64,000 nucleotides of DNA from Basidiobolus meristosporus CBS 931.73 (lineage: Eukaryota; Fungi; Basidiobolomycota): contig MCFE01000084.1 in assembly GCA_002104905.1 (NCBI GenBank), forward strand, positions 62,001 through 126,000. The letters are read 5' to 3'. Within the stretch, counting starts at the first letter, position 1, and each line of letters starts with the position of its first letter. Below, one piece after another: positions 4,578 to 54,500 of the stretch. The notes beneath the pieces were generated by a model. It saw only the letters and a program-made list of their open reading frames with translations, searched no databases and had not been told where the DNA came from. The position numbers and the translations under genes are program-made.

Positions 4578-5310
4578 AGACTTGTTCTGTTGGATAGTGC
4601 CACATTGAGCCATGAGTGCCAAATGATGCCATAGTGTGCCAGAGAGACCAAATGAGCCTCTACCTGGCCACAGAGTGTGAAACATAGCTCTGCATCTTCA
4701 CGCAAAGCAGCCCCTGGTTTCACCCATTGTGTTGGAGAATATCCATTTTTTGACCTTTTTTGTTGGATCAATGTTGTGCAGGATGTGTTAGAGCACAAGC
4801 AGATTGAAGATATGCATCTGAGACTCAATACCCATGGCACTATGAATCCAGCTCCTGTAGCTTGTATCATGTCACAAAAATGAATGGCACTATCTTGATC
4901 CACTGGTACTATCTGGCACTATATTTAAATATTGGCCCTAAAGTAAGATCTATACAAAGCTCTTATAGTGCCAGATAGTACCAGTGGGCCAAGATAGTGC
5001 CATTCATTTTTGTGACATGATACAAGCTACAGGTAATTGATTCAGAGTGCCATGGGTATTGAGTACCAGATGCATATCTTCAGCTCTCCTGTGCTCTTAC
5101 ACATCCTGAGCTATATTGATCCACAAAAAAAGGTCAAAAAATGGATTTTCTCCTGCCCAATGGGTGAAACACAGGGGCTGCTTTACATGAAGATGCAGAG
5201 CTATGTTTCACACTCTGTGGCCAAGTATAGGCTCACTTGACCTCTCTGGCACACTATGGCATCATTTGGCACTCATGGCTCAATGTGGCACTATCCAATG
5301 GAACAAGTCA
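4578..5310. mobile_element. 733-bp foldback (giant inverted-repeat) element, copy A
   Basis: Arms of about 346 bp (4578-4923 and 4964-5310) around a 40-bp spacer. Ends AGACTTGTTC...GAACAAGTCA. AAT on both flanks (4575-77, 5311-13). Confidence 0.9.
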
Positions 5311-6103
5311 AATATCTTAGAGACATTATTATTATTCAAGCACAAACATTAAGAGTATGATGTTCCCACAAGTAAACCTATAGAAGTAAGCATACAAGAG
5401 CATCAAAGTAGGCAAACCATGCACCATTAGCCAGAATATGGATTTAATCCAAACCCAGTGATAAATGCCTAGTGAAAAATAACTTGGTTGTGCAAGTGGA
5501 CTCAATCCTGATCAGCCATCAGGATCCTGCAATGAGGCCACTTTTTATCCAGTAGGCTTGTTTTAATGACCTCCTGTACAATGTTATAAAAGGATTCTAA
5601 AGTGTTTTGCTCATTCAGCTGCTAACTAGTTAAATATACCTACAATATGTGGATGGTCCTTGGATGGAGTTTGGATTGAACTCTGATGGTCCTATTGAGT
5701 CCTACATTTATCTGATTATACCCAACAAGCCAGCTCATGCAAATATATATTAAGTGGGAAGAACTTGAGGGGTTATTGATAGCTCCTTTGCAGCCATTTG
5801 TCAGCATTATAACAGCCTTACTGCAGTCAATCACTTGTACTGCAGAGTAGTCCTGATCAGTTGGTTAGTGTAGCTTAATACTAGCTAGCTGAAATGCCAG
5901 ATTGATCTGACACTCATCAACACTAACAGGCACTATAATATTTACCTTGCTACCAGTGCTAGAATTAAGCTACAGGTATTTCTACTTAATCTTTCATATA
6001 ATGCACCAAATAGTGCATTTCCTGTTTATTAACTCTTCATAATGATCCTGAAACATTCCTGCTGGTGGATGTTGTCTGGCTTAAATATATTGCTCATTAC
6101 TGG

Positions 6104-6473
6104 TGTTATGATCTACACCGTGAGTGTGTAAGTCAGATCAGTATTTGGTTAAATCAGTTAGTCTTATATTGAGCCTAGTGGTAAATAAGTGCTACCTATT
6201 ATATCAGTAGTATTGATCTGAAGACAAATCAGCAGATCCCCATCAGACAGCAACAGATATTTTAAGTAGGACCTAAGTGGGTAATGATAATGCAAGCAAA
6301 TAAGTCATCAGCCACAACCTACCTTAGGAGATACAATTAATCAGCAATTGATCTGGCAAAAATGTATATAAGGAGCTGCTGGATCCTCAATAAAGATCAG
6401 TTCATGTTTTAGTGAATACAATACTAGCTCAACTCCCTATCCCTCTACAACTCTTATACCAAGGCTTGTAACA
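6104..6473 (+). repeat. Isolated LTR of the Gypsy-1 family
   Basis: TGTTATGATC...TGTAACA. Reverse-complement homolog of 3496-3863. No TSD match found. Confidence 0.8.
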
Positions 6474-9453: not shown

Positions 9454-9640
9454 GGTTAAGAGCCTCACCTACCTCTATCTATTCTAAAGATGACCTCTAC
9501 CAGCAAGTAGAACTATACAAACCTCTTCCCTCAAAGGAGAGTTCTTAGACCATAGTGCATGATGTATCAGTGGTGCTAACTGGCTTTCAAGTGCAGTATA
9601 CACAGGACTCATCAAAGTATGAAACAGAGGGTAACTAAAT

Positions 9641-9800
9641 AGACTTGTTTAGTTGGATAGTGCCACACAGCACCATAAATGCAAAATAGTGCCACAGTGC
9701 ACCAGAGAGGCAAGGCAGACCTGTTCTTAGCAGCAGAGTGTGAACCATAGTTCTGCATCTTAATGCAAAGCAGCCCCTGTGTTTCACTCAGTGTGCTAGA
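9641..9800. mobile_element. Truncated left arm of the foldback family, copy D (right boundary approximate)
   Basis: AAT followed by AGACTTGTTT.GTTGGATAGTGCC. Homologous to the arms of copies A and B for about 160 bp. Confidence 0.8.
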
Positions 9801-9810
9801 GAAGTTTTAT

Positions 9811-12396
9811 TTATTCACACATCTGCTCCATAAGAAGCCCCAAAAAGGTGAAGCAAGGCCCAGTACTTGCCACACACCAAGCAAGATGGAATAGAGAATG
9901 GACACAGTAGTGACAGAGATCTACATGTTCAGCTTGATGTTTGTAGTATAGCTGCTCAAATTCCATTACAAACTCTTTGCACAACAGCTTTAGATGCATC
10001 AAATTAGTATTGGTGATCCACTTCTGAATAAATATTCCTACAATGTCCACACATGACTCCCAGTGCTTGCAATGTATTCTTGGTGTGAATGACTTCAGAA
10101 CACCACCAGAATAAATACAAATCCAATTAATCCAGTCTTTGCATTTGTATTTTGCCTATGCATATGAATATTGATTGGAGCCCATGAGAAGTACCTAGGG
10201 CAGTAGATACTCTGCAATGTCTTACCAATTTTTTCAAATTTATATGGTGTCTCAAAGGGCTCATTTAGCTTGAAATGCCCCATGTACAACTTGGTCATCA
10301 GTATAGGGATATTGTTGTAAAGCAAATGCATTGCTCCCAGTGGACAGTTTTTGCTCCAACAGATACCCTCTATCTTAAGTGTCTCTGGTTTCCAATTGAT
10401 TCCATATTCAGGCCAGTGGCTTATAGCTTGCCAACTTTGCTACAATTGCATGCTGACTTCTGTATGTTCTCTCTGTGAGAAGATTATGTTCTTAGTGTTG
10501 GTGTTTAGGTAATAATAATGTGGGTGAGTTATGGAGTAAAGCCTCTGGATCTCACACATTCACCAGCAGTGCCCTTTGTTGTGCCCAGAAAAGCTGGCTA
10601 TCTTGCTGATGGCAGGGATATTGCCAATGCAGGTAATAATATGTGCTTTAACATGATGGCCATTTACTGTTATCCTGCTGGAAAGCATACAAGATTTATC
10701 CAGCAATGGATACAGGTAGCTATCCAAGTTGGACAGTGACTTGAACCCAGATACCAGTGAGACTACCATCAGATTTTTGCTCTGATACCATAAGATTAGC
10801 AGCAGATTCAGGTTGATGAGAATCAGTGGCCAGCAGGATTTGCTGGCAGAGTACTTGTTTAATGAGTATCTGTCAAGAGCTAAGGCAAAGGTATGGTCAT
10901 ACATACCTACAAATTAACCCTGGCTTCTTAGCCAATTGTAATGTTTGCCATCAAATATATTAGATATGTTGGTGCTTCATTTATGCTGAGTGTGGAACTT
11001 TATAGCTTCACAATGTCATGATCACATGACAACCATGAACACCCATGCCAAATTTCAGCTTCCTAGCTCAATTTCTAAGAAATTCCTTCTAGAACCTTCT
11101 ACCACCTTCCAGAAAGTTCCTGACCATTCCAAACCATTGTTACACAATGGAACATTCCATGGAAGCTTTCCATTGTATTTTTCATAGTCCAGTACCATAT
11201 ATGGAAGTACTAGGTCACATGACTTAGTCACATGATCAGGTGACCCAATCCATTTCCCCATCCTGTCTCAGTGCCGTGTCATCTATATCATTATCCCCAG
11301 CACCATTGCTGTGCCTCACCCCACAACCCCATTAGTATTAGCTAATATCTCTTGGCATCAGTATAGCCAAAAAGTATATATAGTCCTATCCCCCCTTAAG
11401 TATTCCTCAGTCTGATAAACACCGGTCTTGAATAAACAGCCTTGCCTTGGAAATCCGCCTTGCCTTGTTGATCCACACCTAAGTCCTTTCCTGGTCCTGC
11501 CTTGCCTAGCTCTACTCTCCTGCCTTGTGTCTATTCATAACACACAATATTTGTTGGACTGCATGAGCTTCTTGAGACAGGTTATTACCAAAATATATCT
11601 GGAGTGTGAGCAATACTTTCCCTCAATGGTAGTGGATTTCTGTCAATCAGGACCTGTTGCAATGGTGGCATTTTTGTATATGAATGCAATGCAGCTGTTA
11701 ACACAAGCTGGAATCAGGAGAGTCTCTGGGTCATATACTGCCAGCCATGCAACAGTTGTCCACTTGTACCATGTGCATGGTAAGTTGCTTCCCAGAATGA
11801 TTTTGGCAAGAAGTAGTAGTAAATTATTAAAGCCCCCATTACCAATATTAGTGGAAATGCACTACTTCTTTAGCCACAACACTACATCACTCACCAGTAG
11901 ATGGATCACTAGACTCACTTGGCTCCACAATGTATCACCAGCATTTGTTTCAATGGGTGTTATCTCATTGCATATTGGATTTTGAATGGGCTCATGTATG
12001 GTCCATTAGTGAGCCTTATTCGTGTGAACTCTTACTCTGCATACCATATTCAGAAGGCTGAGGTGAGCCTAAAGGCATCACAAACTTACCTGACTGAGCT
12101 TGTGTGAGGTGGCAAAGATGGCCAAGTACCAATGTAGATATATAAACTGGCTAGCAAGATGATGTTGCTACAATAGTGACTGATGAATGGTCAGGTATGA
12201 CTTGTGTGGCAAAACACTGGCTGTGATCCTTGTAATACTTCCTATGCTGTCTGCATGCTACATGGCTGAGAGGCTTGCTACAACAGCCACATGGTCTTTT
12301 CCTCTTCTCTTGCAGTGTTGAATCAATGTAGCCATTTCTATGGGGCTGACTGTTTGACCTTCTGCAATGTAATGCTATATCTGACTTTTTGGTCAA
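9811..12396 (-). pseudogene. Tnp2/Transposase_21 (CACTA-type) transposase pseudogene, interrupted by a solo LTR
   Basis: Fragments match the family pattern: N-terminal C-x-C-C...HR (12151-12396), CVNSCIAF (about 11690), WPLILINLNL...LDSYLYPL...GNIPAISK..FSGHN (10560-10904), MHLLYNNIP..LYMGHFK (10095-10331), FEQLYY..HSLFHL..TGP..MEQMC (9811-10050). Confidence 0.85.
11014..11542 (+). repeat. Solo LTR (529 bp) inserted in the CACTA transposase
   Basis: TGTCATG...CATAACA flanked by a perfect 5-bp TSD CACAA (11009-13, 11543-47). Confidence 0.9.
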
Positions 12397-12562: not shown

Positions 12563-14491
12563 ATGCTGCCAAAAAGTAAAGCAAAGTTGTCTGGTTCCCA
12601 GCCAAACCACAACACTGATGGCAGCAGAAGAACGGTTGAACAACAGCTTGTTTTGACACCTGGTGCAAGAAGCAGGGCCACAATCAAAAAAGGCAATGTT
12701 GACAGTGTGCTCACTAAAAGAAATAATGCGGACTCCTCAGGCTTTCAGTCAAGTAGGCAACTCAGAACCCCTGCAGAGCAGCAAGCTCACCATCATGCTC
12801 AGGCAAATGAGCATATAGCAAATGCCAAACCTTCATTTGAAGACCAGCAAGTGGGCATCATAACATCACCACCACCTGTATTAGCAAGTATATTGTCAGC
12901 TTGTATTGAAGCATTAACAAAGCAATTAGGTGTGGTGGCTGATAGGATAGATGCAATGGCCCAGAGAAATCAGGAAATAGTCCAGAAACAGGATAAGCAG
13001 ATAATACATGTTGAGTAATCAATATCTCAGATAGAATAAGCAGTATCTTTGTGGCAAAGAAGGAACTCAAGTAGCTCAATGTTATAGCAAAGAATTGCGC
13101 CATTCACTAATGGAACAGCAGAGCAGCAATATACAGTCTTTAAAGTACAGCAACAGTGCCCAAAGATAAAGCCCACAGAAAAGCCTATCATAACATGGGA
13201 GGGAGAAAGTGTAGTATATACACCAGAGGCTAAAATCAAAAGATATTGAAGATCTGTGGAGCTGTTGAGTGCAATAATAAAGAGTGGGCTAATATTCAAG
13301 ATGTTGTTATAAGTCTAGCACACCATCACCTTACCATGGGACCATCAGGAACTCAAGGCCAAGCAGAATGTGCTTGACATGTTCCATGAGCATTATCCTG
13401 GATTCAAGTGGGCAAATGGATTTTGGACCAGCACTGGTATACTACGAAAGTATTGTAAGAACAGCAGAGGCTATCAAAGGTAGAAGAACAAGGGTGCCAT
13501 GGCTAAAAACCTGCAGCTTCCTCAGGAGCCTGTTACAAGCAGGTCTGAAAGCAGGGCTGAAAGCTCCAGACAAGCATCAAAGAGATGTCAGGTAGCTGGG
13601 AGAGTGCCAATAAGGGACAAGCAGGCAGACATGTATGCACCAGCACAACATTTATCAAAGAAAAAGAACAGTACCACTCAAGACACACTCAGCCGAAGTA
13701 GCAGTGAAGGGCCTGGCAGTGATAAAAACCAGTGGCTTCCTCAGGAGCCTGTTGCAACTAAAGCAGAAAGCATAAAACAAGCAGAAAAGAAACATCAGGT
13801 TGCCAGAAGAGTGCTAGTAAGAGTCAAGTAGGCCAAAAAAGAGGGGTCAGAGCAGAATTTATCAAGGAAAAACATGGTTCATTACAAGAAGCATGCAGAC
13901 AAAGTAGCAGTGAGTGATCTGGCAGTGATAAAGGAAAAGATAAAGGGAAAAATGTCTACCAAAGCCTGAGGTTGGGAAGCATGCAAAAAAGATGCAGTTC
14001 TTACCAATTAATGCCACGAGCCTGGAAGAGACTGAATCCTATGATAGCCAATTAGATTTACTAACAAGAAAACAGCTGTTTTCACAAGAGTTGGAAGCAC
14101 AGGCAGTAGTGCTACACTCCAGCAAGGTAGATGAGTATGCGGAGAAGGGGAATTTGTCTACCGCAGCCTTCACATCCTGCATTATTGACAGAGTGGAGAT
14201 CCCACTGACAGACAAGGCTACAACTTCAAAAACTCAAATGACTATCACAATGCCTTCAGTGGAATTTGGAACATAGATAGGCACTTCAAGAGGATATGGC
14301 ACTTCTTCATGAGCAGTGCCCAAGGAAACACACTTGAATATTGCAAGGATTTGTTGCAAAGACTGGCAGATGAGGTACCTGACCTTTCAGTGCCAGCTGA
14401 AGACCAGGACATGTGGGAACCAGTGAATGAACAGTTGCATAAAGCCGTTGAGTTCCTGACAAAGTCATGGAAACAAAACATTACAGCATAA
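12563..14491 (+). pseudogene. Decayed second ORF of the CACTA-type element; product unknown
   Basis: Successive plus-strand ORF pieces (12563-13018, 13499-13831, 13992-14276, 14309-14491) broken by point stops. Coiled-coil-like IEALTKQLGVVADRIDAM. Divergent from the transposase. No domain recognised. Confidence 0.5.
13505..13945 (+). repeat. Two-copy direct repeat of about 220 bp inside CACTA ORF2 (approximate)
   Basis: GCTTCCTCAGGAGCCTGTT at about 13516 and 13736. Downstream AGTAGCAGTGA..G..CTGGCAGTGATAAA recurs at the same spacing. The first copy's LPQEPV motif is repeated. Confidence 0.8.
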
Positions 14492-17070: not shown

Positions 17071-17071
17071 A

Positions 17072-20000: not shown

Positions 20001-21562
20001 GAGTGGCATGTCCACATCATCATACTGTTGAAAGAACTCTTGAAGTGGTTGCTTAGAAGCTCCAGTTCTTCCAAAGTGTCTCAGATCTTCAGTTTCATAG
20101 TATATTTGGAGTCTGTCATACTTGGCTTGTAGGTAGGTCCTCATTAAGGCCCAGTAAGTGAGAATGTCTCCTTGTCTAAGAAGCTTAGTGGTAATATCAT
20201 TGGTGCTGTAGTAATGAAGTCTTCAGCCTTTTCTTGTTCAGAGAGGCTGCACATCTTGCAGTGCTTCTCTCACTTGAATATGAAGCTTTCCACATTCTTA
20301 CATCAAGCTGTGGGGCTCCATGCAAGGGTGGTGAGGGCATAAAATGCATTCCAGGTAGGTAGGTTGGTGTTGTCATCTTGGTAATTTTGGTAGTCTCTTT
20401 TTCAATAAGTGAATAATGGCTCAAATCTTGTGGAAAGTCTTGTTGGGTCCTAGGGAGCTTGTATGAGCCCCCCTTGTTGGGTGTCAAATCTATGGCAGTG
20501 TATAAGTCCAAGGGAGATATATAACCAACACTTCTCAAGTGCTTTGCATGTGGGGTACTCACTGGATGCAATAACCTCTGGCAAAAGCATGCTTGAAATA
20601 CTTAGGTTTTGTCTCTAATCTAATGTGAAGTGGAATAAAGCCATAATCTTGTCAAGGGGAAACTACTGAGCTACAAGCTCCAACTTAGTTGGCATCTTAA
20701 CAAAAGTATGTGCTAGGTTCAGTGTCCTTTAATATTGCAGTTTACTAAAGCTTCCAAAGTCAAAACAACTATAAACTGCACCAGCAGGGACTTGATAAGA
20801 AAGCAGTTGTGGTAAATAGTTACAAAGACAGAAAATTATCCCTGCCTGTACAAGAACAAACTTGGGAAAGAATCAAATATAATAAATGATACCTGATCTG
20901 AGTATTCCACTCAAGTAGTGCCTCCAAGGTCAGTTAGCTGTCAGCATAGATTCCTGGTAGTGACCTGTGGTCTAGGATTGGAACTTCTGCTAGCAGCAGG
21001 TAGCAGTGTTTGCACTAATCAATAGGTCAGTACAATGATAAAAGGGATGATGATTTATTGCTGAGGTATTGCCTCCCTTATATACTTTTCTTGCTGGCAA
21101 AATAATCACTAATCATAGTGTTCTAGAAGGTTCCAGTGATCAAATAGAAATCTTAGTGACATTAGAATGAGCTAGGAATGTTCTAAGTATATGCCAGAAG
21201 GTTCTAAGAAGCACAGTACACCCAACCAATCAAGCATCAGTATTCTGAAGCCTGTGTAATATAGGGATACCATATATTGTATGAAAATAGTAGGGATTGT
21301 GACACAATTTGGTCATGTGTTACAGATACTGGTGAGGGTACCAGCCTAATAAAGAAGTACTTACATCATGTAATCCCACATAATGTGAGGAATGACTTAT
21401 GTAATGAGGTAAGCAGGTGTGATAGTCAGCCAGCTTATGGGATAGCACTGACCAAGTAATGCAAATGGGATAAAACTAATATTTGAGTAGTAGAAAAAGA
21501 GGGAAGTGGAAAATATGAGAATGAGCACATCTGTCAGTTGGTGTTGCTGCAACCCCACTACA
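17072..21562 (-). mobile_element. Degenerate Ty3/Gypsy element (Gypsy-2); RNase H region deleted
   Basis: gag (19902-20571), protease-like IDSSSE (19475-19774), RT (GPYANRWFV, AVFVDD; 18234-18800), integrase (17330-17900), GPY motif (about 17290), PPT at 17123-17136. The first about 50 bp of the LTR are shared between 17072-17122 and 21512-21562. Confidence 0.85.
20703..21324 (-). repeat. LTR of a further family lying at the 5' end of Gypsy-2 (left end approximate)
   Basis: Starts TGTAACACATGACC on the minus strand. Homologous to 28448-28772 plus 33465-33526. Confidence 0.7.
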
Positions 21563-21589
21563 GCACCCTCCTGCAATGTTTGCATCATG

Positions 21590-22600
21590 TATACAACTGA
21601 ATACCACCATTATAGTAGGCAAAATTCAATATTTGGGTATGTCTCTTTAATATAAATTAAAATGAATCCATATTGCACCATAAACTACACTCATACTGAC
21701 CATTTTGGTTGCCATCACACCAATTGGATCGTATATCAGTGATTGTTTAGTCTAACAATATGCTGAAGCTGTGTGTCCCCAATTGACCCACTGACCAATA
21801 CACAAGCTACCCAATTTGCCAGCAAATACACCATTTTGCCCATATATTAGGTAAATTCCTGACTTTAGTGACTGGACTAGATATCAGAGCTATCACACAA
21901 CTAATTGGGATGGTGCAAGACATATCAAATAGCTGCACTGGTGTTACTGATGGTGTATAAGCATGTAGGGTGTTTATCAATGGGGGTTCTGTCTGAAATG
22001 TGAGATAACCTTGGTATTACTTACATCAAAATTTAGAGATCACTGGTGTATAATGGCTAGATTAAGATTGTAAGAACTTGCATTATATGAGACATGACAA
22101 ATGACAGCAATTCAACTCAATTGCATGATCTTCTAGGTTTTTCTCACAAGGATTACTACTGAAGCCTATGGTAGTGATTCACTTTACTCTCCTAAACTAC
22201 TTCCTTGTTAATTATCTTCTTAGCTACTTGCATACTTGTAGTCAGTATTATGCCTCCTAATTGATGAGTGCAGTGCTGGAGCTTGGCTCCATTGAGTTGC
22301 TCCAGATAATGTTATAAAGCTGGCCTGAAGCACCATGTGCATATGTATTCTTTACTAGCCAAAGACTCCTGTGGTAGAGGCACTTCCAGTGGGTCATTGT
22401 CAGTCAGTTCACCAGAAGCAGCTTGCGGATGGTCTGGTGTAACAGTACACATAGGCACAACTTGATGCATTGGCATGGCAAGAGTGGCAAAGTTAGTGCT
22501 GTAAATTAGTCCAACAGTGACCAAGACTAGTCCAGAATTGTTAAGTAAATATTTAGCTGCTGAATGATACCAAATAGTCCAACATTTCAATACTTCCCCC
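21590..22600 (-). repeat. Second copy of the unidentified repeat (approximate)
   Basis: Aligns with 15780-16620. Confidence 0.6.
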
Positions 22601-23199: not shown

Positions 23200-23932
23200 A
23201 GACTTGTTCCGTTGGATAGTGCCACATTGAGCCATGAGTGCCAAATGATGCCATAGTGTGCCAGAGAGGCCAAGTAAGCCTATACTTGGCCACAGAGTGT
23301 GAAGCATAGATCTGCATCTTCATGCAAAGCATCCTCTGTGTTTCACCTATGATGCAGGAGAAAATCCATTTTTTGACGTTTTTTTGTGGATCAATATTGT
23401 GCAGGATGTGCAAGAGCACTAAAGGATTGAAGATATACATCTGGTACTCAATACCCATGGCACTCTGAATCTAGCTCCTGTGGCTTGTAACATGTCACAA
23501 AAATGTATGTCACTATCTTGGTCCACTGGTACTATCTGGCACTATATTTAAATATTGGCCCTAAAGTAAGATCAATACAATGCACTTATAGTGCCTGATA
23601 GTACCAGTGGACCAAGATAGTGCCGTGCATTTTTGTGACATGTTACAAGCCACAGGAGCTAGATTCAGAGTGTCATGGGTATTGGGTACCATATGCATAT
23701 CTTCAATCCTTTAGTGCTCTTGCACATCCTGTACAACAGTGACCTAAAAAAAAGGTCAAAAAATGGATTTTCTCCAGCACAATGAGTGAGACACAGGGGC
23801 TGCTTTGCATGAAGATGCAGATCTATGTTTCACACTCTGTGGCCAAGTGTAGGCTCACTTTTCCTCCCTGGCACACTATGGCATCATTTGGCACTCATGG
23901 CTCAATGTGGCACTATCCAATGGAACAAGTGT
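23200..23932. mobile_element. 733-bp foldback element, copy B, inserted in Copia RNase H
   Basis: Arms 23200-23546 and 23587-23932, 40-bp spacer, ATT on both flanks (23197-99, 23933-35). The empty site TTG-ATT-ATCTTG is visible (reverse complement) in the intact Copia near 32850. Confidence 0.93.
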
Positions 23933-28031: not shown

Positions 28032-28447
28032 CTATCTGGCACTATTCTAACCTACTAGCCCTAAAGTAAAACTCATACAAAGTACTTATAGTGCTACATA
28101 GTACCAGTGGACCAGATAGTGCCATGCATTTTTGTGACAAGTTACAAGTCTCTGGATCTAGATTCAGAGTACCATAGGTATTGAGTACCATAGGTATTGA
28201 GTACCAAAAGCATCCCTTCAAGCTTTCTGTACTCTCTCATATCATGCACAATGCTGATTGCAAAAAAAGGTCAAAATATGAATTCTCTCCAGCACAGTGG
28301 GTGAAACAAAGGGGTGGCTTTAAATGAATATGCAGAACTACATTTCACACTCTATGGCCAAATAGAGGCTGACTTGACCTCTCTTGGACACAATGGCATA
28401 ATTTGGCACTCATGGCTCAATGTGGCACCATCCAAAAGAACAAGTCC
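28032..28447. mobile_element. Spacer plus right arm of a foldback element, copy E, cut by a Copia LTR
   Basis: Begins CTATCTGGCACTAT immediately after the LTR end, contains the spacer and right arm, and ends GAACAAGTCC. Includes a small duplication of GAGTACCATAGGTATT. Confidence 0.82.
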
Positions 28448-32100: not shown

Positions 32101-33098
32101 CAGTTCTATTAGCTCTATATGTGGATGATCTTATTATAGCCACCAATAACCTAGAAACATTGGAAGAGACTAAATCCAGCCTATCTAAGGAGTTCAAGAT
32201 GTCCGATCTAGGAGAACTCAGTTACTACTTAGGGATTAAGTTCTCCATAGACAGAAGTACCCAGACTATTACCCTAAGCCAATCCAAGTATATTCAAGAC
32301 ATACTAAAGAAGTACAAAATGGAAGACTGTAAACCGGCAGCTACCCCAATGGAGACAAACCTTAACTTGGTCAAAACTCAACCAAATCAAGAGAGCTTGG
32401 TGCCATCTGAAAGCCCTGGCTTTCCTTATCAATCTATGGTCAGCAGTCTGATGTATATCATGCTTGGAACACGTCCAGATATCTCATATTCAGTGGGAGT
32501 TGTCAGCCAACATAATCAGAATTATGGATCTGATCATATTGCAGCAGTTAAGCGGATTTTTAGATACCTAAAAGGAACTGCTGATATCTGCTTAAGATAC
32601 ACTTATAAGGATTCAGAACAGGATCTTGTGGGATACTCTGATGCTGATTGGGGACGAAATTTAGAAGACAGAAGATCCACCACAGGATACACCTTTCTTT
32701 ACTGTAAAGGAGCAATTTCATGGAATTCAAGAAAGCAACCAACCGTAGCACTTTCTACTACAGAGGCAGAATATATGGCAGCCTGTGAGGCTACAAAAGA
32801 AGCAATGTGGTTAAGAAAGCTGTTTACAGATTTAGGCCTATGTCAAAAAACGCCTATTACTTTATTTCAAGATAATCAAGGATGTATACAATTAGGTAGA
32901 AATCCAACTTTTCATGCTAGAACCAAGCATATAGATATTAGACATCATTTCATACGTGAAGCTATAGAGAGTAACTTAGTTAGATTAGTTTACTGTCCTA
33001 CAGATGAAATGATTGCAGACATATTTACCAAACCATTAGCTAGAGACAAGTTTGAATATCTTAGGTCAAACTTAGGACTAGTCAGTATGAACATTTAG
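29127..33098 (+). CDS. Copia Gag-Pol polyprotein (1323 aa from ATG 29127; alternative start at 29154)
   Basis: gag (LDGSNYQVWKVKM), CCHC knuckle CNYCKRKGHTSDRC, protease WYIDSGASQH, pre-integrase LWHRRFGH...CEAC, integrase HSDLCGP/RSDNGGEY/NGVAER, RT YVDD, RNase H GYSDADW...TEAEY...DNQG...ADIFTK. Confidence 0.97.
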   Translation: MSPKLSLSAMSTTAITGIFPSAEKLDGSNYQVWKVKMKMLLQERGLWDIVMGEECPPKNVGEEALKYQKKEQSAFNCICLNVKDKLLIQCSRAKTAKNAWKALEDTYQSCSAAKKMYLRRKFFTTKMLPGEEMKNLINRITLLVDEMESVGVPTTDEDVIVTILNSLTDKFQGLVSALESRTEDLTLNYVYGRLLDEELRKSSANKKEEENALISNDNQQRRYPRPYKGNSNLFCNYCKRKGHTSDRCFKKRDYQQKKPEYGNAATTEDRLFISALNMTTNKDSQTWYIDSGASQHFTHQKELFTQYQEIPIKTVFMGDNRTLDAVGEGTIQVNLRSSEGSHTLTFKEVLYVPEIAKNLLSVSKATAEGLSFSFDNSGCRITDQNGAHIASGIRDQNLYKLTYIPSYLEANISNLNEETPMLWHRRFGHINFDYLRKMIKDQLISGVKIDPPANLEHCEACIYGKQARQPFKSSGLIKTKKKLDLIHSDLCGPMQNLSLGGMKYLITFIDDYTRYTWVYFMERKEEALSKLREFKAMVERETGEKIKKIRSDNGGEYTSKLFIHFCKIHGIKQETTVPYSPQQNGVAERANRSIIDMARSMIHDQKLSYDFWAESVATAVYLKNRSYNRILRDSTPFEAWYGHRPSAEHLRIFGCTAYAKKLAGNQSKFEPKSVKCIFLGYCNESKAYRLYNTKAKKLIKSRDVLFDENSKFSQKMTSDDDENLISSPPIVRIESEQNNENFFTPEDSTTVVQPESVPRNIPEVIIPVSNARRSNWTRNSPNYYINEGTNLAYAYSVHIDEPQTVKEALNSPQTKFWRSAMTEEYQALMENQTWDLVKLPINRKSIGCRWIFKTKYKADGTIERYKARLVAKGYSQTKGLDYTETFAPVAKFNSIRLILAIAAKYKFFIHQMDVKTAFLNGELDEDVYMDQPDGFVDQDNPHLVCKLKKSLYGLKQSPRAWNCKIDSYLESLSFKRSNADYSIYYKPDRANPVLLALYVDDLIIATNNLETLEETKSSLSKEFKMSDLGELSYYLGIKFSIDRSTQTITLSQSKYIQDILKKYKMEDCKPAATPMETNLNLVKTQPNQESLVPSESPGFPYQSMVSSLMYIMLGTRPDISYSVGVVSQHNQNYGSDHIAAVKRIFRYLKGTADICLRYTYKDSEQDLVGYSDADWGRNLEDRRSTTGYTFLYCKGAISWNSRKQPTVALSTTEAEYMAACEATKEAMWLRKLFTDLGLCQKTPITLFQDNQGCIQLGRNPTFHARTKHIDIRHHFIREAIESNLVRLVYCPTDEMIADIFTKPLARDKFEYLRSNLGLVSMNI

Positions 33099-33109
33099 CT
33101 GAGTGGGAG

Positions 33110-33459: not shown

Positions 33460-33836
33460 GTTTTGACTTTGGAGGCTTTAGTACATTGCCATCTTAAAGG
33501 CCACTGAACCCAGCACATACTTTACACTCTTACTCTTGAAGCTCACCTTTGATTCCTCAAGATATTCACTTGCACTCTGTGTGATACTTTGAGTTTTTGC
33601 CTTAATTGACTAATGTACTGTGTGATATATTAGTGGAGTCAGGTGGCTTTCAAGAGTAATATACTCAAAACTCATCAAGGCAACAGCTCCACTCAAAATC
33701 TCCTTGGTTCTCAAAGTTGAGGCGCATATAGACACATCCAATGTGTACTGTGCAAATTGCATGCAGGAATGTTTGTACACAGCCTAGCATTTGGGCCAGA
33801 TCATGGAGGGGCAAAAAAAAATGGGGCGGGGGCCCC

Positions 33837-44062: not shown

Positions 44063-45423
44063 ATGAAGATGGTTGCTGAAACTGCTAAACTCTCCTCAGA
44101 ACCAGCCTCTCATTTGCCTGCCAACGTACCCGGGCCTTCTCCTACAAGCCTATCTGCGTTGTTAAACCCCACTTCTGGCCCTGGTATAGCCAATGGCTCT
44201 TATGATAGATCCCAGGAGGAGGGCAGAGACGATAGAAACGAACATAGCTTCGACAAACGAAACTCACTAGCCAGCACAGATAAACCCTCTGGTGTGTACC
44301 ATTGGTCTTGTTTATTTTTGAAATCGACACCAAGTAACACGTGCTTTTAGGGAATGGGAAGAATCAGCCTGGCCAACAGAAAGCCAAGAGAAAGAGAATC
44401 ACTCCAGAGCAACTGAAAGAGTTGCTTGCAATGTTCGAACAGACTGATACTCCCAGCTTTGAAGTTAGAGAAAATTTATCCAAGAAACTGGTGATGACAA
44501 ATAGAGAAATACAGGTGGGTGTAGACAAATCATATCGTCATTCGTACGTTGATTAATATAGTCGTAGGTTTGGTTCCAGAACAGACGCGCCAAGGTTAAC
44601 CGTGCCAAAGCAGAGAATGCTCATCGATTCCTGCACCACCCGATGGGTCAAGCTGGTGCAAGTCACGGGGGAAATCCAGGAGGGAATTGTACATATCAGT
44701 TTATTCCTGTCAACGCAGCTGGAAAGTTGAGAGACAACACCTATAACCACGCCCATCCTTACCCTCAACCACAGCGCTTACGTTTTCAGAACACCCTTAC
44801 AAACCATAATCGACCCAACTACAAACAAAATGTTCCACCTCCCATTAAAGTTGCACCATATAATGTTCCTATGCAACCAAGTCCTGTTCCTTCGCCAGGA
44901 CATGGCCTTTCCCCTATATCCCCATCGTTTGGCTCCATGCAATCGTTGCTTTCACCACTAAACGCGATTGCCAACGGGTCCGTTTCTTCGCATTGGGCCC
45001 CTTCACCCACTACTGATCGCTTTGGCCTTACTATGACGCCGCCATCATCAGCCAATGTCCACGGACCTCACTTCTCGACAACAATACCACCACTCTCGCC
45101 TACACACCCATATCCGGTAGGTGTTGTACAGCCACATCCCGTTAGTACTTCGATGAATCCCTTGTTCACCCAGAAAGTAAGTAGTGTCGGCAATCACGCA
45201 CTAGCTATGTGCCCTTGCTCACTGTTGCTACCTCTAGATTAAGGCCATATCCCCTGATCCCCATATGGCGAATTTCACTCCGCCGGCTGAGTTCCCGCGC
45301 CAAGCCAACTCCATGGATATACTGGCCAGCGTGGCAGCAGAGGAGTGCGCCAAAGTAGAGGAGGGTAGTAATCACCATACCCCTCCCGAACCATCCAATA
45401 GAAAATGGAGGCCTTGGGATTGA
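44063..45423 (+). CDS. Homeodomain transcription factor, 4 exons (44063-44291, 44351-44514, 44568-45176, 45238-45423), 395 aa
   Basis: Spliced homeodomain KRKRITPEQLKELLAMFEQTDTPSFEVRENLSKKLVMTNREIQ|VWFQNRRAK, P/S-rich middle region, C-terminus MDILASVA...KWRPWD*. All introns GT-AG and frame-preserving. Confidence 0.92.
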
Positions 45424-47422
45424 CCAAGCCGCCTCTATCCTTGTAAGTAGGTAGAAAAGTAGTTATCTCGTGCAACTGCTGACAACTTTGTGAAGCATAC
45501 GACTCCCCCATATTGTTTTTACTTGGCGGTATACTCATCTCGACTCTGGCGTACTTTCAGCTGTCACTTCTCCTGTACTTTTTTCACAAGTTTTGTTTCT
45601 CCCTTTCAATTTGGATTCAGTCACTACTATATACTAACATATCCCCAAATTCACCAGCCATAAACCAGAGAATCCCTATCTTGCCATAAACCGAGGTTTT
45701 TCTTGAGCACGCAAGGTACTGATGAACCTATGCTTAGCTCCCAACCCTTTGCTTGTGTAAATAGAATGAAATAAAGTTTCACTGATGTTGTGGTAACTGT
45801 TGGGTTCAAGCGAGATTAGAGACATCAGTCAGCCAATGCTAGCCGTGCCAGTAGACTCAGAGCCAACGTGGATCTAGATCCCAGTCTACCTGGACAGACA
45901 TCCGCTCCTTCCCAGCAACTCTATTTTCTGAGCTGGGGAGCATACAAACGCCTTGGAACGGCTACGGGCTCAGCACATACACATAGCACTGGATCACCCA
46001 AACGAGAGAATCAATCCTTGTCCTACCGAAACCACGGGAGGATTTTTGGGAATCACATATACTAGGCGTCAAGTATACTGCGCGGACGGTACTTGATCTA
46101 AACATGCAAGGCCAAAAAGTCACCAATCCAAATACGAGGCAAAGCAGCTCCATTGGAGGAGTACCACCTCAAAATGCCTGCGCATGCCCGTTTCATCTAC
46201 GATAGTCACTCATATAGCTCAGATAGGCTGGTGAGGGTGCATCAAGTTTCCTATTCAGCGGAGCAGACGGGCCTGCTGCCACCAGCCCAATGAATTCTCC
46301 GCGATGGGGAGGCCCAGGTCTTCTTTGGCATGATTAGGAGGGCCATTTCGAGGGGAATTTTCCGACCGAATCAATCGAGATGATTTTACGTTCCACTCGA
46401 TTTGGAAAGAAGCAACGTGATGGTCAATGACACATGGTTTTCAAATCTACGCTATTCTGAGTATCGTATAGCGTATAGAGGAGAATACAGTCATGGAAAT
46501 ATGGTCCAAACAGATTGCGCGGAGATGGGATGTAGGATTCTCGACACCATCCCCCATCCCCCATCCCCCATGCTCATGAATGGGAATCACTAAACCCTCC
46601 TTGACACCATGCGAGTCTAATAGAGCGGAATATTCCGCCCATCGGCGTCACGCCCGCCCAATACGTCATCCTATTTGGGATTGGAGTTGGAGTTGGACTT
46701 GGAGATGGAATTGATCGATGGTGGTTGCTGAAAAGCCCAGTCAGAATAGGGTGATACGTTCTCACATCCCCCAAACCAAGTGATGCCCACATGACCCCAC
46801 ATAAGTGCTCTGTCCGACCTATCAGCCAGCTGTCGTGGCCCTGAATGATCTTGGATATAAGCCATGTTTCTGTTTCCTGAATGGCCCACCGCCTTAGTTG
46901 CATTGCCCTCCAACATCACTAAAGTCGACGTTAGCCGATTGGCCAGTGCGATCGTATTCGAGCAAACCTTATGCCTTATGCCATCCACCAACACCCCCGT
47001 AATACTGCGCTGAATCACTCGCACCCGATGGAATCAATCCACTGATTATTAACAGCATCAGGAGATTCCTTGGTTGTTATTAATACTCAATCGGGTCTTC
47101 AGCCACTGATGGTGAGGTAATTCAGGCGGTGTTTTGCGGTAATACTGATGATTTGAGCCGATGTTGTCAACACAGCAGACACGTCAAACACTTGCATCCG
47201 TCCAGCCTCGCACACCCTTCACATACTCCAGCTGGCTCTCCAACTCCTCCCACCAGCCATCTGACCCGACTGTCCTGGAAGCGGCTTCCCGAATATGCGC
47301 CAATGCGCACCCGATGATGAAGAATTCCACCCACAATTTTCCGGATAGTTCAAGCTACTTTATATACACATTCTCATATCAAATAACATGCGGCAGGTTC
47401 GATTCGCATGGGATGCAGGGGA

Positions 47423-48470
47423 TTAGAAGAAGTTGATTGGGAACTTAATGTAACTCTTGCCGTCCAGCTCTGGTTCAGGCATTTTCCCAGCAATCGCGTT
47501 GATCTGCAAGCTTGGTAGCATGAGCTTGGGAAGATCCAATCCGTCATCACGAGACTTGCGGAATTTGATGAACTCCTCCTTGGTGGTGTTCCTGTTGAGA
47601 TGGATGTTCTTCTCCATTTGCTCGGCGATGGTGGTGGAGTACAGGGGCAGCTCATTCTCGCGATACTGGGGTGGGTAATCGTGGCACACGAACATCGTGG
47701 TGTTGGGCGAGAGCGTGAAGAATTTCTTCACCACGGTATCGTACAACTGCTCCGCAGAACCTCCGGGGAAGTCGCATCTGGCTGTGCCAACATCGGGCAT
47801 GAACATGGTGTCTCCAGCGAAAAGACAGTCCTTCACTTTGTAGGAGATGGAGTCGGGGGTGTGGCCAGGTGTGTGAAGTACCTGGATCGTCTGTTCACCG
47901 ATTTTGATTTCCTGCTCGTCGGCCAATAAATGATCGAATTGAGAGCCGTCGTGATCCAAACGCACCGGGTTGAAGAATTTGTTCACTCGCTTTTGGACTA
48001 CTTTGACATGCTCGCCAATTGCCGTTTTGGAATTGGGAAGCTCTTTCTTCAGATACTCTAGGCCTGGTCGGGCAGGAAGGCTTAGTCGAGGCAACACACG
48101 AAAAGTCCAATTAAGCTTGTAACTAACCTGAAAGATGATCCGCATGAACGTGGGTGTCAAGTAACCACTTGGCGTTCAGTCCCTCCGATTTTATGAATTT
48201 TATAATGTCATCGAGCGGCTTAGGGGAAATACGCCCCGAGATGGTGTCATAGTCGACACAGGGATCCAGAATGGCGCACTCTGAGCTTTTCTCGTCAGCA
48301 ATGATGTATGTGAATGTCCACGAGGGCTTATGAAAGAATGGCACGACTAAAGGGGACGATTGGTTCGCTCTCGCAGCAGCTGGGAGTGAGCTTGAAGCCA
48401 TCTGACGTACATATCTTGGGGCGCATTTAAACTGGCGACCGATGTTTCTGCTGGTTAGGGACTTGAACAT
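47423..48470 (-). CDS. Persulfide (sulfur) dioxygenase, metallo-beta-lactamase fold, type-II/SdoA-like, with a predicted mitochondrial presequence; 2 exons (48470-48128, 48063-47423), 327 aa
   Basis: HVHADH, HTPGHTPD, GDTMFMPDVGTARCDFPGG, CHDY, YIKFPIN. Arg/Ser-rich N-terminus without acidic residues (MFKSLTSRNIGRQFKCAPRYVRQM). 64-bp GT-AG intron. Confidence 0.92.
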
Positions 48471-49699
48471 CTTTAAGATAAAGAACAGTGAGCTTGAGAA
48501 TGTGTTTATAACGGGAGAGAGAATCGATCGAGGTATATATAGCGAACTTGGGTGTGGGCTGGGTAAACCTTCCCGTTTCCCAACCATATTAAGAGGTAGA
48601 GATACTGAAATTGGAATCCATCCTTTGAAACCCGTACATAGAAGTTTAAAGCTGTACTACCGCTTCGGGAACCTCCTCTCTCGTGGTGTGGTGTATATTT
48701 TATTGTTTGGTTTTGGAAATCGGGTCGTTCTGCCTGATGTGAGAGATTCAGTGATGCAAGTTTTACCGTGACTAGACAGGATATTCCCCACCTTAATGTT
48801 GTTACACGCAGGATTCCCTCTGGCGCCATTGGTCAGTGGAAAAGTGCGCAATATTATGTCTGTTACGCAAAGTCTCTTAGCCTCTAGACCAAACAATCGT
48901 GAGAAACCATTGGGCAATCCAGCTCTAAATACCATTAGCAAACTTTGTAAATCGGGTTGGCCGCACAAAGTTCGGAATTGCGGGGAAACCTCAAGTGTTT
49001 GGATGTTAGTAGGCAGTATAGTGCAACTGGCACGCTCGTTCCATGAGCCATCCCTCTTCGGACGCATATCGATTGACTCATACCTGAGGAATCCGCGGAT
49101 TTCCTTTTCAACATCCTCCGTGGAATGTGGCTAGATCCTGACTTAAATGGGTAATTGGAGGGAAATTTCATTTCGGGTGTCTGAGTGAACTGAATACATC
49201 CTTTTAGTTTGGTCTGCCGGATTTGCTCGCCACCAGATATCATAACAGTTCCCAGTCACTTCCAAATGGAAATCAAGGCGGAGGCCTATGTGGGGTGAGG
49301 CTGGGATAAGCCCGGATTTTTTGAATGAACAGACCATATGAGCTACATTCATATATGCTGTCATAATTGATGGAAGGCAATTTTATCATAGGGCGAGTAT
49401 TCGTAATGTTCTTCAAGCAGATATGCGAATGTATTGATGTAACATAGGTGGAATCAGTGTATTATTGGTACAGATATCTATGGACAATAATAACCTGCAT
49501 AACTTGACGCATCTCCAATATCTGAAAGACCAAATGTAATCTTAATCATTTTACATGTCAGCTGACCAGTGGCTAATCTTAGTATCCTTACTGATTAAGC
49601 AGGATATCCAAGTGATGGATAATGCTGCTGATATCAACACAATTATAAATATGACCTTTGAGTATCAGGATTCCTATCAATCAGGTGCCACACTATCTG

Positions 49700-51580: not shown

Positions 51581-51589
51581 CTCCCAAGC

Positions 51590-54500
51590 AGGACACATTG
51601 TTTGTCTACATCTGGGGAATATATTTTGTCATTGTCCAGATACACAAGAGCACATTTCCATTGGAGATTTCCCAATACTTTATCAATCATCCTTTGGAGC
51701 ATAGCAGGGCATTGCACAAGCCATAAGGAAATCTTTTCTGCTTGTATAATCTAAATGGTATTATGAAAGCAGTCTTGGGGTGATCATCTGGGGCTACTTT
51801 TACTTACCAATATCTGGAGATTAAGCTGAGAGAACTAAAATATTTAGCCCCAACAAACCTCTTGAGGAGGCCATCTATTGATGATAATGAATGTATGCCC
51901 ATCCAAGTGATGGCATCCAATTTCTAAAAGCCAATATGAGAATGTCACTTTCTGTCCTTCTTTGGTACTATCACTATGGGGAGGCCTACAGAGAGTGGCT
52001 TTATATGATGATGTCATCCTTTAATAAAGCTTCAATTTTTGCTTAGATATAGTTGTGTTACTTTTATATGGAGGGTAATTGTATCTTCCACAGACAGGTT
52101 TATCCAAATAGCTGAACTAGTGCACTTATCCATATTTTATCTAATCAGCATTATACTGTTGTTTGTTGCTCATGTTGTCAATATTATCCTCATATGATAT
52201 TCCCCCTGTTTATTTATTGGCATTAGCTATCCCAAATATTATTTGGCTATGGGATCAGCAGATGTATTTGCATTAGGCAAGTACCTGCATCAGTACCTGT
52301 GACATATGACCTAAGTCTGTGGTACCATTACAATCATATCAATACCATATAAGGTATCTCTATGTTGCACAGGCTTTAAAATACTGATTGTTGACTATGT
52401 GGATATGCTGTGGCTTTAGGACCTTCTAGGACCTTCTTAGAATATTTTTAGCTCATAGTGATGTCATCAAGAGTTCTACTTATGCCTGGTATCCTCCTGA
52501 ACCCTGTCATTGGTGACCACTTGGCAGTTGGGAAAGGTACTTAAGGGAAGTTAATATCTCATCAATCAGTCATCCCTTCTATCAGCAACACATTCCACAT
52601 ATTGACTAGTAGATGATCACTGCACCTACCTTTGGCAGTTACACCTTGGACTTACCATTAAGGAGCATTTCAGGGTAGTGCACAAGATGTGCAGAGGCCT
52701 TTGGAGTCACTTGAAGCACCTAGGAAGCTAGAGAAGCAGGAGCTTCTATCAGAGTGATATATTGATAGAGACACCAACAGTTTAGACCCAGAGGTTATTG
52801 CACCCATCAGACACCTCACACACCTTGAGTTGTGCAGCTTCTGTTGGGAGTACTGCTCCACTACCACTGTGCAGGTGGTAGACTGGGGCTCACTTCCAAC
52901 TCAGGGAGCTCCTCTTCTTGTCCCTTGCTTGTAGGTGGCCCTTGGTTATTTCTCTTAACTTCTAATATTTTACAATGGGACTTATGTGGGCAGTATCACC
53001 ATGCTTTTCTGCTGTTAATCACTGTTCATTTTAAGCTTTGTACTTCAATTTTGGTGGTACCCATACTCTAGGAATTAAGATTCCTTCTAGATGGTTGGAT
53101 ACCTTTGTTGCAGTTATCATTCTTTCATTTGTCAAATATGCTGCTGGTATCTCTAATGAGATCACAGTCTCACCGGCAGATGCTATTTTCATCACATTTT
53201 GTGCTATGACTGGAGACTGTGATGGTTCTGCCTCTTCAATCCTTACACTGTTATTGCATGTCTTGGTTTCATAGGTGATATGAGTTAGTGGGATACTCTT
53301 GATATCCCACCTGAGTTCAGATGCACTGTAGAGTATGTCCATGTTATGTTGAATAAACCAACTCTGACCAATAAGTAAGTCATTGGTGGCAATGTGTAGT
53401 ATCACAACACCTTGGTATAATCAGGTTACCTAGCTAGTTGGGGCAATTAAGCACCACACCCACACTTGTGTCTAATTGATCATTTACTATCCTTAGGCAT
53501 ATGGTGTTGTTGGGGACAATAGACTTGTTCCATTGTGCCATTGATCATAGTGCCAGAAAGTGCTGTATATTTTGTTATTAATTTGATATTTTAGGGTCAT
53601 ATGCATGTCAATTTTGATCCCAAATTGGCACTGTATGGCACCATCTGGCACTCTGTGGCATGATCCAGCACCATCTGGCATGCTATGGCACTATTGGGCA
53701 CTATGATCAGCTGGAATGATGGAACAAGTCTAATATCCAGCTTTGAATGTTTTACTGATAATTCTGACATTATCAATATGTAGGATCTTGTGTCACTGAG
53801 GATAAGAATATCCTGATTCTCAATATGCACCTTTATTTATGTATTCTTGTTTGGGCTCTGTAGGACCATCTGGTTGACATGAAGGGTTGTGATCTCCATC
53901 AGTCCCTCTAACAGCTCTTTGACTAGGGCCAGGGCAAGTCCCAGCAAATTGGTTATTGAGAGGATCACCTTGGTTTGCTCCAGCACCTTAGTTATAGGGA
54001 GCAGGCCATGGGAGGGAGAACTGGTATTCTTTATTTGCTTTAATACCTCTTCACCTACTTTCACATTCTTTGTTTTAGCAGAACCTCTACTGCAGGTTTG
54101 ATTGTGTCTTCTCTAGAAGCATTGTGTTGACACTTCTTCAGCACTACAACCATTCTAACAAGAGGGCTTAAATTGGTTGAGTCCTATTAGCTTTCTGGTA
54201 AGGGATTCTGACTTTTGATGCCCTCTGCTCCTTTGCATCCAATATGGGGTCTTGTCCATATATTTTTCACATTTTTGGGCCCAGTAGCATACATACAAAT
54301 AACACAGATACTGTTGTTTTGGGTGCTCCATCTGTTGGGTAAGAGCTTGTACCTGAGCCTTAAGCTCTATGACAGCTTCCCAGAGCTATTACCTTCATTG
54401 TGGACTTCCTGTATATTAGTGATCAAGAGTTCTTGGACATTTTGTTGTAGTTCCTCATGCTCTCAGTCCAGAGGGGAGGGAATTTTGACATTTTTAGAGG

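What the first reader, a model, noticed from the sequence alone, without database searches (positions are those of the whole stretch)
4578..53731. Unclassified DNA-transposon family: 733-bp near-total hairpins and a 211-bp MITE with AGAC...GTCT ends and 3-bp AAT/ATT target duplication
Seen in sequence: five copies (A 4578-5310, D 9641-about 9800, B 23200-23932, E 28032-28447, C 53521-53731). A and B are both 733 bp, about 95% inverted repeat (about 346-bp arms, 40-bp spacer), with no coding capacity. Flanks are AAT/AAT (A, C), ATT/ATT (B) and AAT on the left of D. The empty site of B, preserved in the intact Copia, fits a 3-bp duplication without indels. Established knowledge: 3-bp TSDs typify CACTA (CACTA/G ends) and PIF/Harbinger (TWA targets), and neither has AGAC termini. 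Inference: this may be a non-autonomous family of an uncharacterised or atypical transposase, and any read-through transcript would form a long dsRNA hairpin.
Basis: partly seen in the sequence, partly recalled or inferred. Interest (0 to 1): 0.75.

Follow-up and report, generated by a model that had tools for sequence, protein, structure and literature searches.

The report
Hairpin-shaped Pangu-type miniature transposons
These are five real copies of small, non-coding jumping elements, and their ends and 3-base A-N-T insertion footprint match the Pangu branch of the PIF/Harbinger superfamily described in 2015, so they are a new family of a known kind and not a new type of transposon.

Summary
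There are five copies:
- two 733-bp foldbacks (A, B);
- a 163-bp end fragment (D);
- a loop-plus-right-arm fragment (E);
- a 211-bp MITE (C) that shares only the AGACTTGTTCC end and 10-bp TGGCAC repeats with the others.

Three paralogous empty sites (clean for B and E, weaker for A) show a 3-bp duplication. All five readable insertion sites are A-N-T (AAT, ATT, AAT, AAT, AGT); chance gives about 4e-6.

The claim that the family is "unclassified" does not hold. A 3-bp ANT duplication with 11-40-bp inverted ends starting AG defines the Pangu group (Harbinger2 in Repbase) of the PHIS superfamily (Han et al. 2015, PMC4482050).

The window holds no PHIS transposase, and the tool that fetches genome contigs was closed. 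I therefore could not see the autonomous partner. Unchecked notes from this scan place a two-gene element with the same ends elsewhere in this genome, which they call Basidiobolus meristosporus. This scan has met the same family many times on other DNA of that genome.

I tested the local rival, a Tnp2/CACTA transposase next to D, and it fails. D sits at a breakpoint that cuts that gene inside a conserved block, and A is a clean insertion into a second copy of it.

Verdict: a new member of a known kind, of low interest.

The parts
4578..5310 (.). Foldback copy A, 733 bp. It is flanked by AAT (4575-4577) and AAT (5311-5313) and is inserted in a decayed Tnp2 gene copy.
   Evidence: the paralogous uninterrupted site gives 27 = 27 nt spacing
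23200..23932 (.). Foldback copy B, 733 bp. It is flanked by ATT (23197-23199) and ATT (23933-23935) and is inserted in the internal region of an old Copia.
32874..32876 (-). Empty site of B: a single ATT in the intact Copia (CTTG ATT ATCTTG).
9641..9803 (+). Copy D: the outer 163 bp of one arm, with AAT on its outer flank (9638-9640). Its broken inner edge abuts a truncated Tnp2 pseudogene.
28032..28447 (+). Copy E: the last few bases of the left arm, the loop and the right arm (A positions 331-732). AGT lies on its right flank (28448-28450). Its left edge abuts the CAACA end of an old Copia LTR at 28031.
21084..21086 (-). Paralogous empty site for the right end of E. Homology to E's flank starts exactly at AGT.
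   Evidence: (I5)
53521..53731 (+). Copy C, a 211-bp MITE with perfect AGACTTGTTCC / GGAACAAGTCT ends, flanked by AAT (53518-53520) and AAT (53732-53734). It carries about 8 tandem 10-bp TGGCACTATA units at 53626-53704.
4590..4643 (+). Subterminal block (arm positions 13-66) with three GTGCC motifs 19-20 bp apart. Only 1 of the 84 differences among the four A/B arms falls here. The mirror block in A is 5245-5298.
   Evidence: (P = 1.1e-5)
10531..10533 (-). Approximate position in the second Tnp2 copy that corresponds to A's insertion site. That copy is uninterrupted here.
9817..11012 (-). Context, not part of the family: a decayed Tnp2/CACTA-type transposase gene (Pfam PF02992) that stops abruptly 14 bp from the inner edge of D.

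Best explanation
The five stretches are non-autonomous members of one cut-and-paste DNA transposon family of the Pangu (Harbinger2) group of the PIF/Harbinger-ISL2EU-Spy (PHIS) superfamily.

Shown here:
- Each copy ends in the inverted repeat AGACTTGTTCC.
- Each copy is a discrete insertion; the sites are empty in paralogues.
- Each insertion duplicated 3 bp of the form A-N-T.
- None of the copies codes for a protein.
- The foldback and the 211-bp MITE share only the 11-15-bp end and arrays of a roughly 10-bp TGGCAC(T)AT / GTGCCA unit under the ends.
- That subterminal block is almost free of changes, while the rest of the arms has diverged by about 10%.
- The four arms of A and B are about equally distant from each other, so the source element was a near-perfect 346-bp-armed palindrome.
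- E predates an old Copia and B postdates it, so the family moved at two or more separate times.

Inferred:
- A DDE transposase of the Pangu type, encoded by full-length elements elsewhere in the genome together with its second protein of unknown fold, recognises the end and the GTGCC repeats. It cuts the element out and pastes it into A-N-T sites with a 3-nt stagger.
- The palindromic form arose once, by inverted duplication of one end of an element (for example by template switching during gap repair), and then spread because both ends are identical good substrates.
- Read-through transcripts would form a hairpin of about 346 bp that could feed RNA silencing.
For: Copies and their statistics.

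The 3-bp duplication is supported by three paralogous empty sites:
- B, exact, with no indel;
- E, where flank homology starts exactly at AGT;
- A, where 27 = 27 nt spacing holds once one AAT is removed.

All five readable sites are A-N-T. The ANT trinucleotide frequency in the window is 0.085, so five of five by chance is about 4e-6.

The literature definition of Pangu is a 5'-ANT-3' duplication, inverted ends of 11-40 bp usually starting AG or GG, and elements of about 3.5 kb with two ORFs. It is found in fungi, animals and algae (Table S3 lists ANT, AWT and ATT families). Pangu equals Harbinger2 in Repbase.

Basidiobolus genomes are reported to carry very large expansions of PIF-Harbinger and CMC-EnSpm elements (PMC5751038).

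Shared 10-bp TGGCAC repeats. GTGCC/GGCAC occurs at about 16 per kb in the foldbacks, against 1.25 per kb in the background.

The subterminal block is conserved (1 of 84 differences fall in 54 of 347 columns, P = 1.1e-5).

Star-like relation of the arms: 53 singleton differences against 1 arm-specific site.

Hairpin folding.

Unchecked notes of this scan report a two-gene PHIS element with the same AGACTTGTTCC ends and ANT duplications elsewhere in this genome.
Against: I have seen no transposase with these ends. The window has no PHIS transposase remnant among 201 open reading segments of 50 aa or more that were scanned. The terminus was not found in the metagenome, viral or prokaryote collections. 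Superfamily membership therefore rests on duplication and end criteria, a paper, and unchecked notes.

Only five sites were read, and the middle base N is A, T or G.

A 4-bp A-N-T-A duplication with an asymmetric element cannot be excluded from the empty sites alone, because the base after the right-hand duplication is A in all four readable cases.

Two of the five copies lie in or against Tnp2 gene copies.
Confidence: 0.8

Rival explanations
1. The family is the non-autonomous partner of the Tnp2/CACTA-type (CMC-EnSpm) transposon whose decayed gene lies next to D. On this view D is that element's natural end.
For: CMC elements make 3-bp duplications (established knowledge). D's inner edge lies 14 bp from the end of Tnp2 homology on the minus strand. 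A also lies within a Tnp2 copy.
Against: A is a discrete insertion with its own AAT duplication that interrupts one Tnp2 copy, while the other copy is uninterrupted at that point.

At D, Tnp2 homology runs up to 9817 and then stops. Its best-matching relatives (P0032, P0079, P0087, P0014) continue for about 235-245 more residues. The first 35-45 of those residues are conserved among relatives and are absent on either side of D. The junction is therefore a breakpoint inside the gene.

The ends are not CACTA/CACTG, and CMC duplications are not sequence-specific. No second AGAC end lies beyond the Tnp2 region.
Confidence: 0.04
2. This is the first reader's view: the family is served by an uncharacterised or atypical transposase outside the known superfamilies, or by another rare superfamily that makes 3-bp duplications, such as Zator or Academ.
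For: No transposase could be tied to these ends with the tools at hand. AGAC ends and A-N-T targets are unlike classical CACTA or TWA-type Harbinger elements.
Against: Both features are the published diagnostic of Pangu. Unchecked scan notes describe complete two-gene PHIS elements with the same ends in this genome. Basidiobolus is reported to be rich in PIF-Harbinger transposases.
Confidence: 0.08
3. The duplication is TA (Tc1/mariner, Stowaway-like, with GAC...GTC ends) or 2-bp AT (ISL2EU-like), and not 3 bp.
For: C and B can be read as TA|GACTTG...CAAGTC(G)|TA.
Against: With a TA duplication, B's right flank would need a 3-nt indel to match the empty site in the intact Copia. The 3-bp reading needs none. 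A would read TA on the left and AA on the right. A 2-bp AT reading makes the ends asymmetric by one base. E's flank homology starts at AGT and not at TA.
Confidence: 0.02

Closest known systems
Pangu group (Harbinger2 in Repbase) of the PHIS superfamily, Han et al. 2015 (PMC4482050)
   Same: A 3-bp 5'-ANT-3' target duplication. Short inverted ends starting AG (11 bp shared here; the published range is 11-40 bp). Presence in fungi. Non-autonomous derivatives are expected.
   Different: The published fungal members are from ascomycetes and basidiomycetes. According to the scan's unchecked notes this genome is a zoopagomycete, Basidiobolus. The paper searched by transposase and did not describe MITEs or near-total palindromes. 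The transposase link was not seen here.
Canonical PIF/Harbinger elements and their Tourist-type MITEs
   Same: A 3-bp AT-rich duplication, short inverted ends and small non-coding derivatives. From memory, the end has a similar CTTGTT core.
   Different: Their target is TWA (TAA/TTA). Here all five sites are A-N-T and none is TWA.
Foldback-type elements (Drosophila FB, Arabidopsis FARE, Galileo) and long-inverted-repeat MITEs that give hairpin small RNAs in plants (PMC9641971, PMC10004981)
   Same: Almost the whole element is one inverted repeat. It is predicted to form a long hairpin as single-stranded DNA or RNA.
   Different: From memory, FB, FARE and Galileo make 7-9-bp duplications and belong to other superfamilies, and FB arms are long arrays of tandem subrepeats. 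Here the duplication is 3 bp, and only short arrays of a 10-bp unit lie under the ends. No small-RNA data were available.
Bacterial IS5-family insertion sequences with ANT targets
   Same: Han et al. report the same A-N-T target and place Pangu next to IS5 in their tree.
   Different: These are eukaryotic, non-coding elements. No relation could be tested without the transposase.

Membership tests
Pangu / Harbinger2 (PHIS superfamily) | 3-bp target-site duplication of the form 5'-ANT-3' | tested here: met
   The sites read AAT, ATT, AAT, AAT (D, left side only) and AGT (E, right side only). The 3-bp length is fixed by empty sites for B and E and is consistent for A. Five of five by chance is about 4e-6.
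Pangu / Harbinger2 (PHIS superfamily) | Terminal inverted repeats of 11-40 bp, usually starting AG or GG | tested here: met
   AGACTTGTTCC is present at every intact end. The foldback and the 211-bp MITE share 11-15 bp.
Pangu / Harbinger2 (PHIS superfamily) | An autonomous element of about 3.5 kb with the same ends, encoding a DDE transposase (DDE_Tnp_4 or DDE_Tnp_1_6) and a second ORF | not testable with these tools
Collection scans for the terminus found nothing. It is reported only in unchecked scan notes.
Pangu / Harbinger2 (PHIS superfamily) | The transposase falls in the Pangu clade of the DDE tree | not testable with these tools
   No transposase sequence was available.
Canonical PIF/Harbinger (Tourist MITEs) | TWA (TAA/TTA) target duplication | tested here: not met
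   None of the five sites is TAA or TTA.
CACTA / CMC-EnSpm | CACTA or CACTG termini | tested here: not met
   The ends read AGACTTG.
CACTA / CMC-EnSpm | Ends physically bound a Tnp2 (PF02992) transposase gene | tested here: not met
   A interrupts one Tnp2 copy as a separate insertion. D's junction cuts the other copy inside a conserved block, about 240 codons short of its best-matching relatives.
MITE (structural class) | Under about 800 bp, non-coding, with inverted ends and a target duplication, in several copies | tested here: met
   Sizes are 211 and 733 bp. No ORF is conserved between A and B. There are five copies in 64 kb.
Foldback (FB-like) elements | Nearly the whole element is one inverted repeat | tested here: met
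   Two arms of 346 bp plus about 40 nt of loop make up 733 bp.
Foldback (FB-like) elements | Arms built of long tandem subrepeat arrays, with a 9-bp duplication as in Drosophila FB (recalled from memory) | tested here: not met
   Only short arrays of a 10/19-bp unit occur, 2-4.5 copies long. The duplication is 3 bp.

The most novel reading that the evidence does not exclude
The AGAC-ended, A-N-T-targeting family might not be served by a PHIS transposase at all. It might be served by a different enzyme, for example through cross-mobilisation by the abundant Tnp2-type transposase, whose gene copies it keeps turning up in. That would be a new pairing of ends, target and transposase. A milder version: the near-perfect palindromic master is kept because its hairpin transcript controls the family's own activity.
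Probability: 0.06. Interest if true: 0.6.

Novelty: new member of a known kind. Interest (0 to 1): 0.2.

Why it matters
It gives a clean local record of a Pangu-type non-autonomous family: two subfamilies, three empty sites and a datable order of insertions. It also points to a roughly 55-bp subterminal block with 10-bp-spaced GTGCC repeats as the likely cis-acting site. Nothing is known about DNA binding in the Pangu group, so that lead is useful.

Pangu is little studied. Its MITEs and foldback derivatives were not covered by the founding paper, and an early-diverging fungus would widen its known range. None of this changes how transposons are understood, and the scan has already described this family repeatedly in the same genome.

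Tried and rejected
1. Looking for the autonomous partner in the window. Pfam scans of 89 open segments of 80 aa or more and 112 segments of 50-79 aa in the repeat-rich parts found Copia, Gypsy, Tnp2 and host-gene domains, but no DDE_Tnp_4, Plant_tran or DDE_Tnp_1.

3. Scanning for the 25-nt terminus in metagenome, viral and prokaryote-genome collections. There were no hits. These collections are not expected to hold this fungus, so the blanks say little.

4. Confirming the organism. The exact look-up of the MFS protein shows it is in NCBI, UniRef and EukProt on a 178-kb contig, but the names are withheld. The name Basidiobolus meristosporus rests on scan notes only.

5. TA, 2-bp AT and 4-bp ANTA duplication models. 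TA and AT were rejected on the empty sites. ANTA was not strictly excluded, but it needs an asymmetric element.

6. A cluster of GTGCC motifs at 14280-14390 turned out to be ordinary coding-like sequence and not another copy.

7. No paralogous empty site exists in the window for C or for D's left flank.

8. ESM Atlas look-alikes for the two open segments between D and the Tnp2 domain gave only a weak DUF4218 lead. tblastn with the relatives then settled that both segments are Tnp2 coding sequence.

9. I took E at first for a hairpin-centre break. It is in fact bounded by the end of an old Copia LTR.
Full report
**What is there**

- B, 23200-23930, 89% identical to A.
- E, 28031-28446, matching A positions 331-732 at 78.5%.
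- D, 9641-9803, matching A positions 1-162 at 79%.
- C, 53521-53731, which matches only itself.

The 25-nt terminus occurs six times with up to 3 mismatches, against none expected. The 11-mer AGACTTGTTCC occurs six times with up to 1 mismatch, against 1.33 expected.

A and B are each 733 bp. Each has two 346-bp arms that are 90-91% alike within a copy, around about 40 nt. Both fold into a single hairpin, with z-scores of -65 (RNA) and -69 (DNA).

C is a 211-bp MITE with perfect AGACTTGTTCC...GGAACAAGTCT ends. The right ends of A, B and E carry one changed base each (GTCA, GTGT, GTCC).

**Target duplication**

B lies in the internal region of an old, minus-strand Copia. The young Copia next door keeps the uninterrupted site, CTTG-ATT-ATCTTG (32874-32876, minus strand). 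B's flanks align to it with no indel only if ATT, or ATTA, is duplicated. A TA duplication would need a 3-nt indel.

E's right flank is paralogous to 20762-21093, and the homology starts exactly at AGT.

A lies in a decayed Tnp2 gene copy. A second copy of that gene (10510-10560, minus strand) is uninterrupted. The spacing between conserved anchors is 27 nt in both copies once the element and one AAT are removed. This support is weak, because the two copies are only about 74% alike.

The five readable sites are AAT, ATT, AAT, AAT and AGT. A-N-T trinucleotides make up 8.5% of the window, so five of five by chance is about 4e-6.

**Shared signals of the two subfamilies**

The foldback and the 211-bp MITE share only two things.
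- The first is the 11-15-bp end.
- The second is arrays of a roughly 10-bp unit, TGGCAC(T)AT (GTGCCA on the other strand), under the ends. The foldback arm has three units 19-20 bp apart, plus three in the opposite sense near the loop. C has about eight tandem units.
- The motif occurs at about 16 per kb in the foldbacks, against 1.25 per kb in the rest of the window.

Among the four arms of A and B, 84 differences are spread over 347 columns. Only one falls in columns 13-66, the block that holds the three outer motifs (P = 1.1e-5). I read this as selection for transposability in the source lineages. The block is the likely binding site of the transposase or its partner protein. That is an inference.

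**History**

The four arms are about equally distant from each other (88-91%). There are 53 singleton differences, 6 copy-specific, 2 crosswise and 1 arm-specific. The source element was therefore a near-perfect palindrome. The small copy-specific excess is what the neighbouring note on arm-to-arm copying describes.

E's left edge is the CAACA end of the old Copia's LTR at 28031. The bases flanking that Copia, AGATA and CTATC, do not match each other, so the locus was later rearranged.

B sits inside the same old Copia. The order is therefore E, then the old Copia, then B. The family moved at two or more separate times. None of the foldback-type copies looks recent: they differ by 11-22%.

**Which transposase**

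The window holds no PHIS transposase. 201 open segments were scanned, and only Copia, Gypsy, Tnp2 and host-gene domains came up. The terminus is absent from the metagenome, viral and prokaryote collections.

The assignment therefore rests on diagnostic features. Han et al. 2015 (PMC4482050) define the Pangu group of the PHIS superfamily by four things:
- 5'-ANT-3' duplications;
- inverted ends of 11-40 bp that usually start AG or GG;
- elements of about 3.5 kb with a DDE transposase;
- a second ORF with no known domain.

They find the group in fungi, animals and algae. Kojima 2025 (PMC12730594) equates Pangu with Harbinger2 of Repbase. Both features that can be tested here are met.

Muszewska et al. 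2017 (PMC5751038) report very large PIF-Harbinger and CMC-EnSpm expansions in Basidiobolus.

Notes of this scan, which are AI notes that I did not check, name the genome Basidiobolus meristosporus. They describe complete two-gene PHIS elements with the same AGACTTGTTCC ends and A-N-T duplications, and the same 730-734-bp foldbacks, on many other pieces of it.

**The local rival**

D's broken inner edge lies 14 bp from a Tnp2/CACTA-type gene on the minus strand (PF02992, E = 1e-8). I searched that fragment against the 1.84 billion protein representatives and mapped the relatives back on the window with tblastn.

Homology runs without a break from 11012 down to 9817 and then stops. The best-matching relatives (P0032, P0079, P0087, P0014) continue for about 235-245 more residues. 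The first 35-45 of those residues are conserved among the relatives and are found on neither side of D.

D is therefore joined to the middle of a broken gene and is not the natural end of a Tnp2 element. A is a separate insertion that interrupts the other Tnp2 copy. Tnp2 copies are targets or neighbours of this family, not its partners.

**Verdict**

The family is not unclassified: it fits Pangu/Harbinger2. It is a new family of a known kind, and this scan has already met it repeatedly in this genome.

What I could not do:
- see the autonomous element;
- confirm the organism's name, which was withheld;
- test small RNAs.

Noticed in passing
window 28773-33460: An apparently intact, very young Copia. 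Its two 351-bp LTRs differ at one base. It has a perfect 5-bp duplication, GTTTT, and one open frame of about 1,367 aa carrying gag, protease, integrase and RVT_2 domains.
   Followed up: partly
whole window: CpG is almost gone from every repeat. Observed/expected is 0.02-0.09 in the foldbacks, the old Copia, the Gypsy and the Tnp2 region, and 0.22 even in the young Copia. It is near normal in genes (0.77-0.79), and GpC is normal throughout. The majority sequence of the foldback arms has no CpG at all.
   Followed up: partly
window 3947-5461 and 9817-11982: Two decayed copies of a Tnp2/CACTA-type element in opposite orientation. Each has a second conserved ORF head-to-head with the transposase (11419-11982 plus strand, matching 4238-3947; 42-50% at protein level). 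Two of the five Pangu-type copies lie in or against these copies.
   Followed up: partly
right flanks of A, B, C and E (5314, 23936, 53735, 28451): The base after the right-hand duplication is A in all four readable cases (A-N-T-A). The base before the left-hand one varies (C, G, C, A). This may be an extended target preference or chance (about 0.01).
   Followed up: no
window 22595-28031: The old minus-strand Copia has non-matching flanking pentamers (AGATA on the left, CTATC on the right). This is the usual sign of recombination between two elements or of a later deletion. Its LTRs are only about 81-85% alike.
   Followed up: partly
window 3496-3863 and 6104-6473: A pair of 370-bp inverted repeats (79% by blastn) that start TGTTACAAG like an LTR. 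They bracket the Tnp2 fragment that carries copy A.
   Followed up: no
window 15800-22400: A decayed Gypsy-type element with diverged LTR pieces (15809-16475 and 21684-22349, 71-74%). RVT_1, RNase H and integrase domains were found in the batch Pfam scan, and I place them in this element without having mapped them. Other Gypsy pieces lie at 1-3455.
   Followed up: no
window 35600-49000 and 60693-62579: A gene-rich, CpG-normal stretch. I located an MFS transporter (39832-41430), a metallo-beta-lactamase-fold protein (47423-48160) and an LRR protein (60693-62579). Casein kinase II beta and acyltransferase pieces also came up in the batch Pfam scan; I assume they lie here, but I did not locate them.
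   Followed up: no
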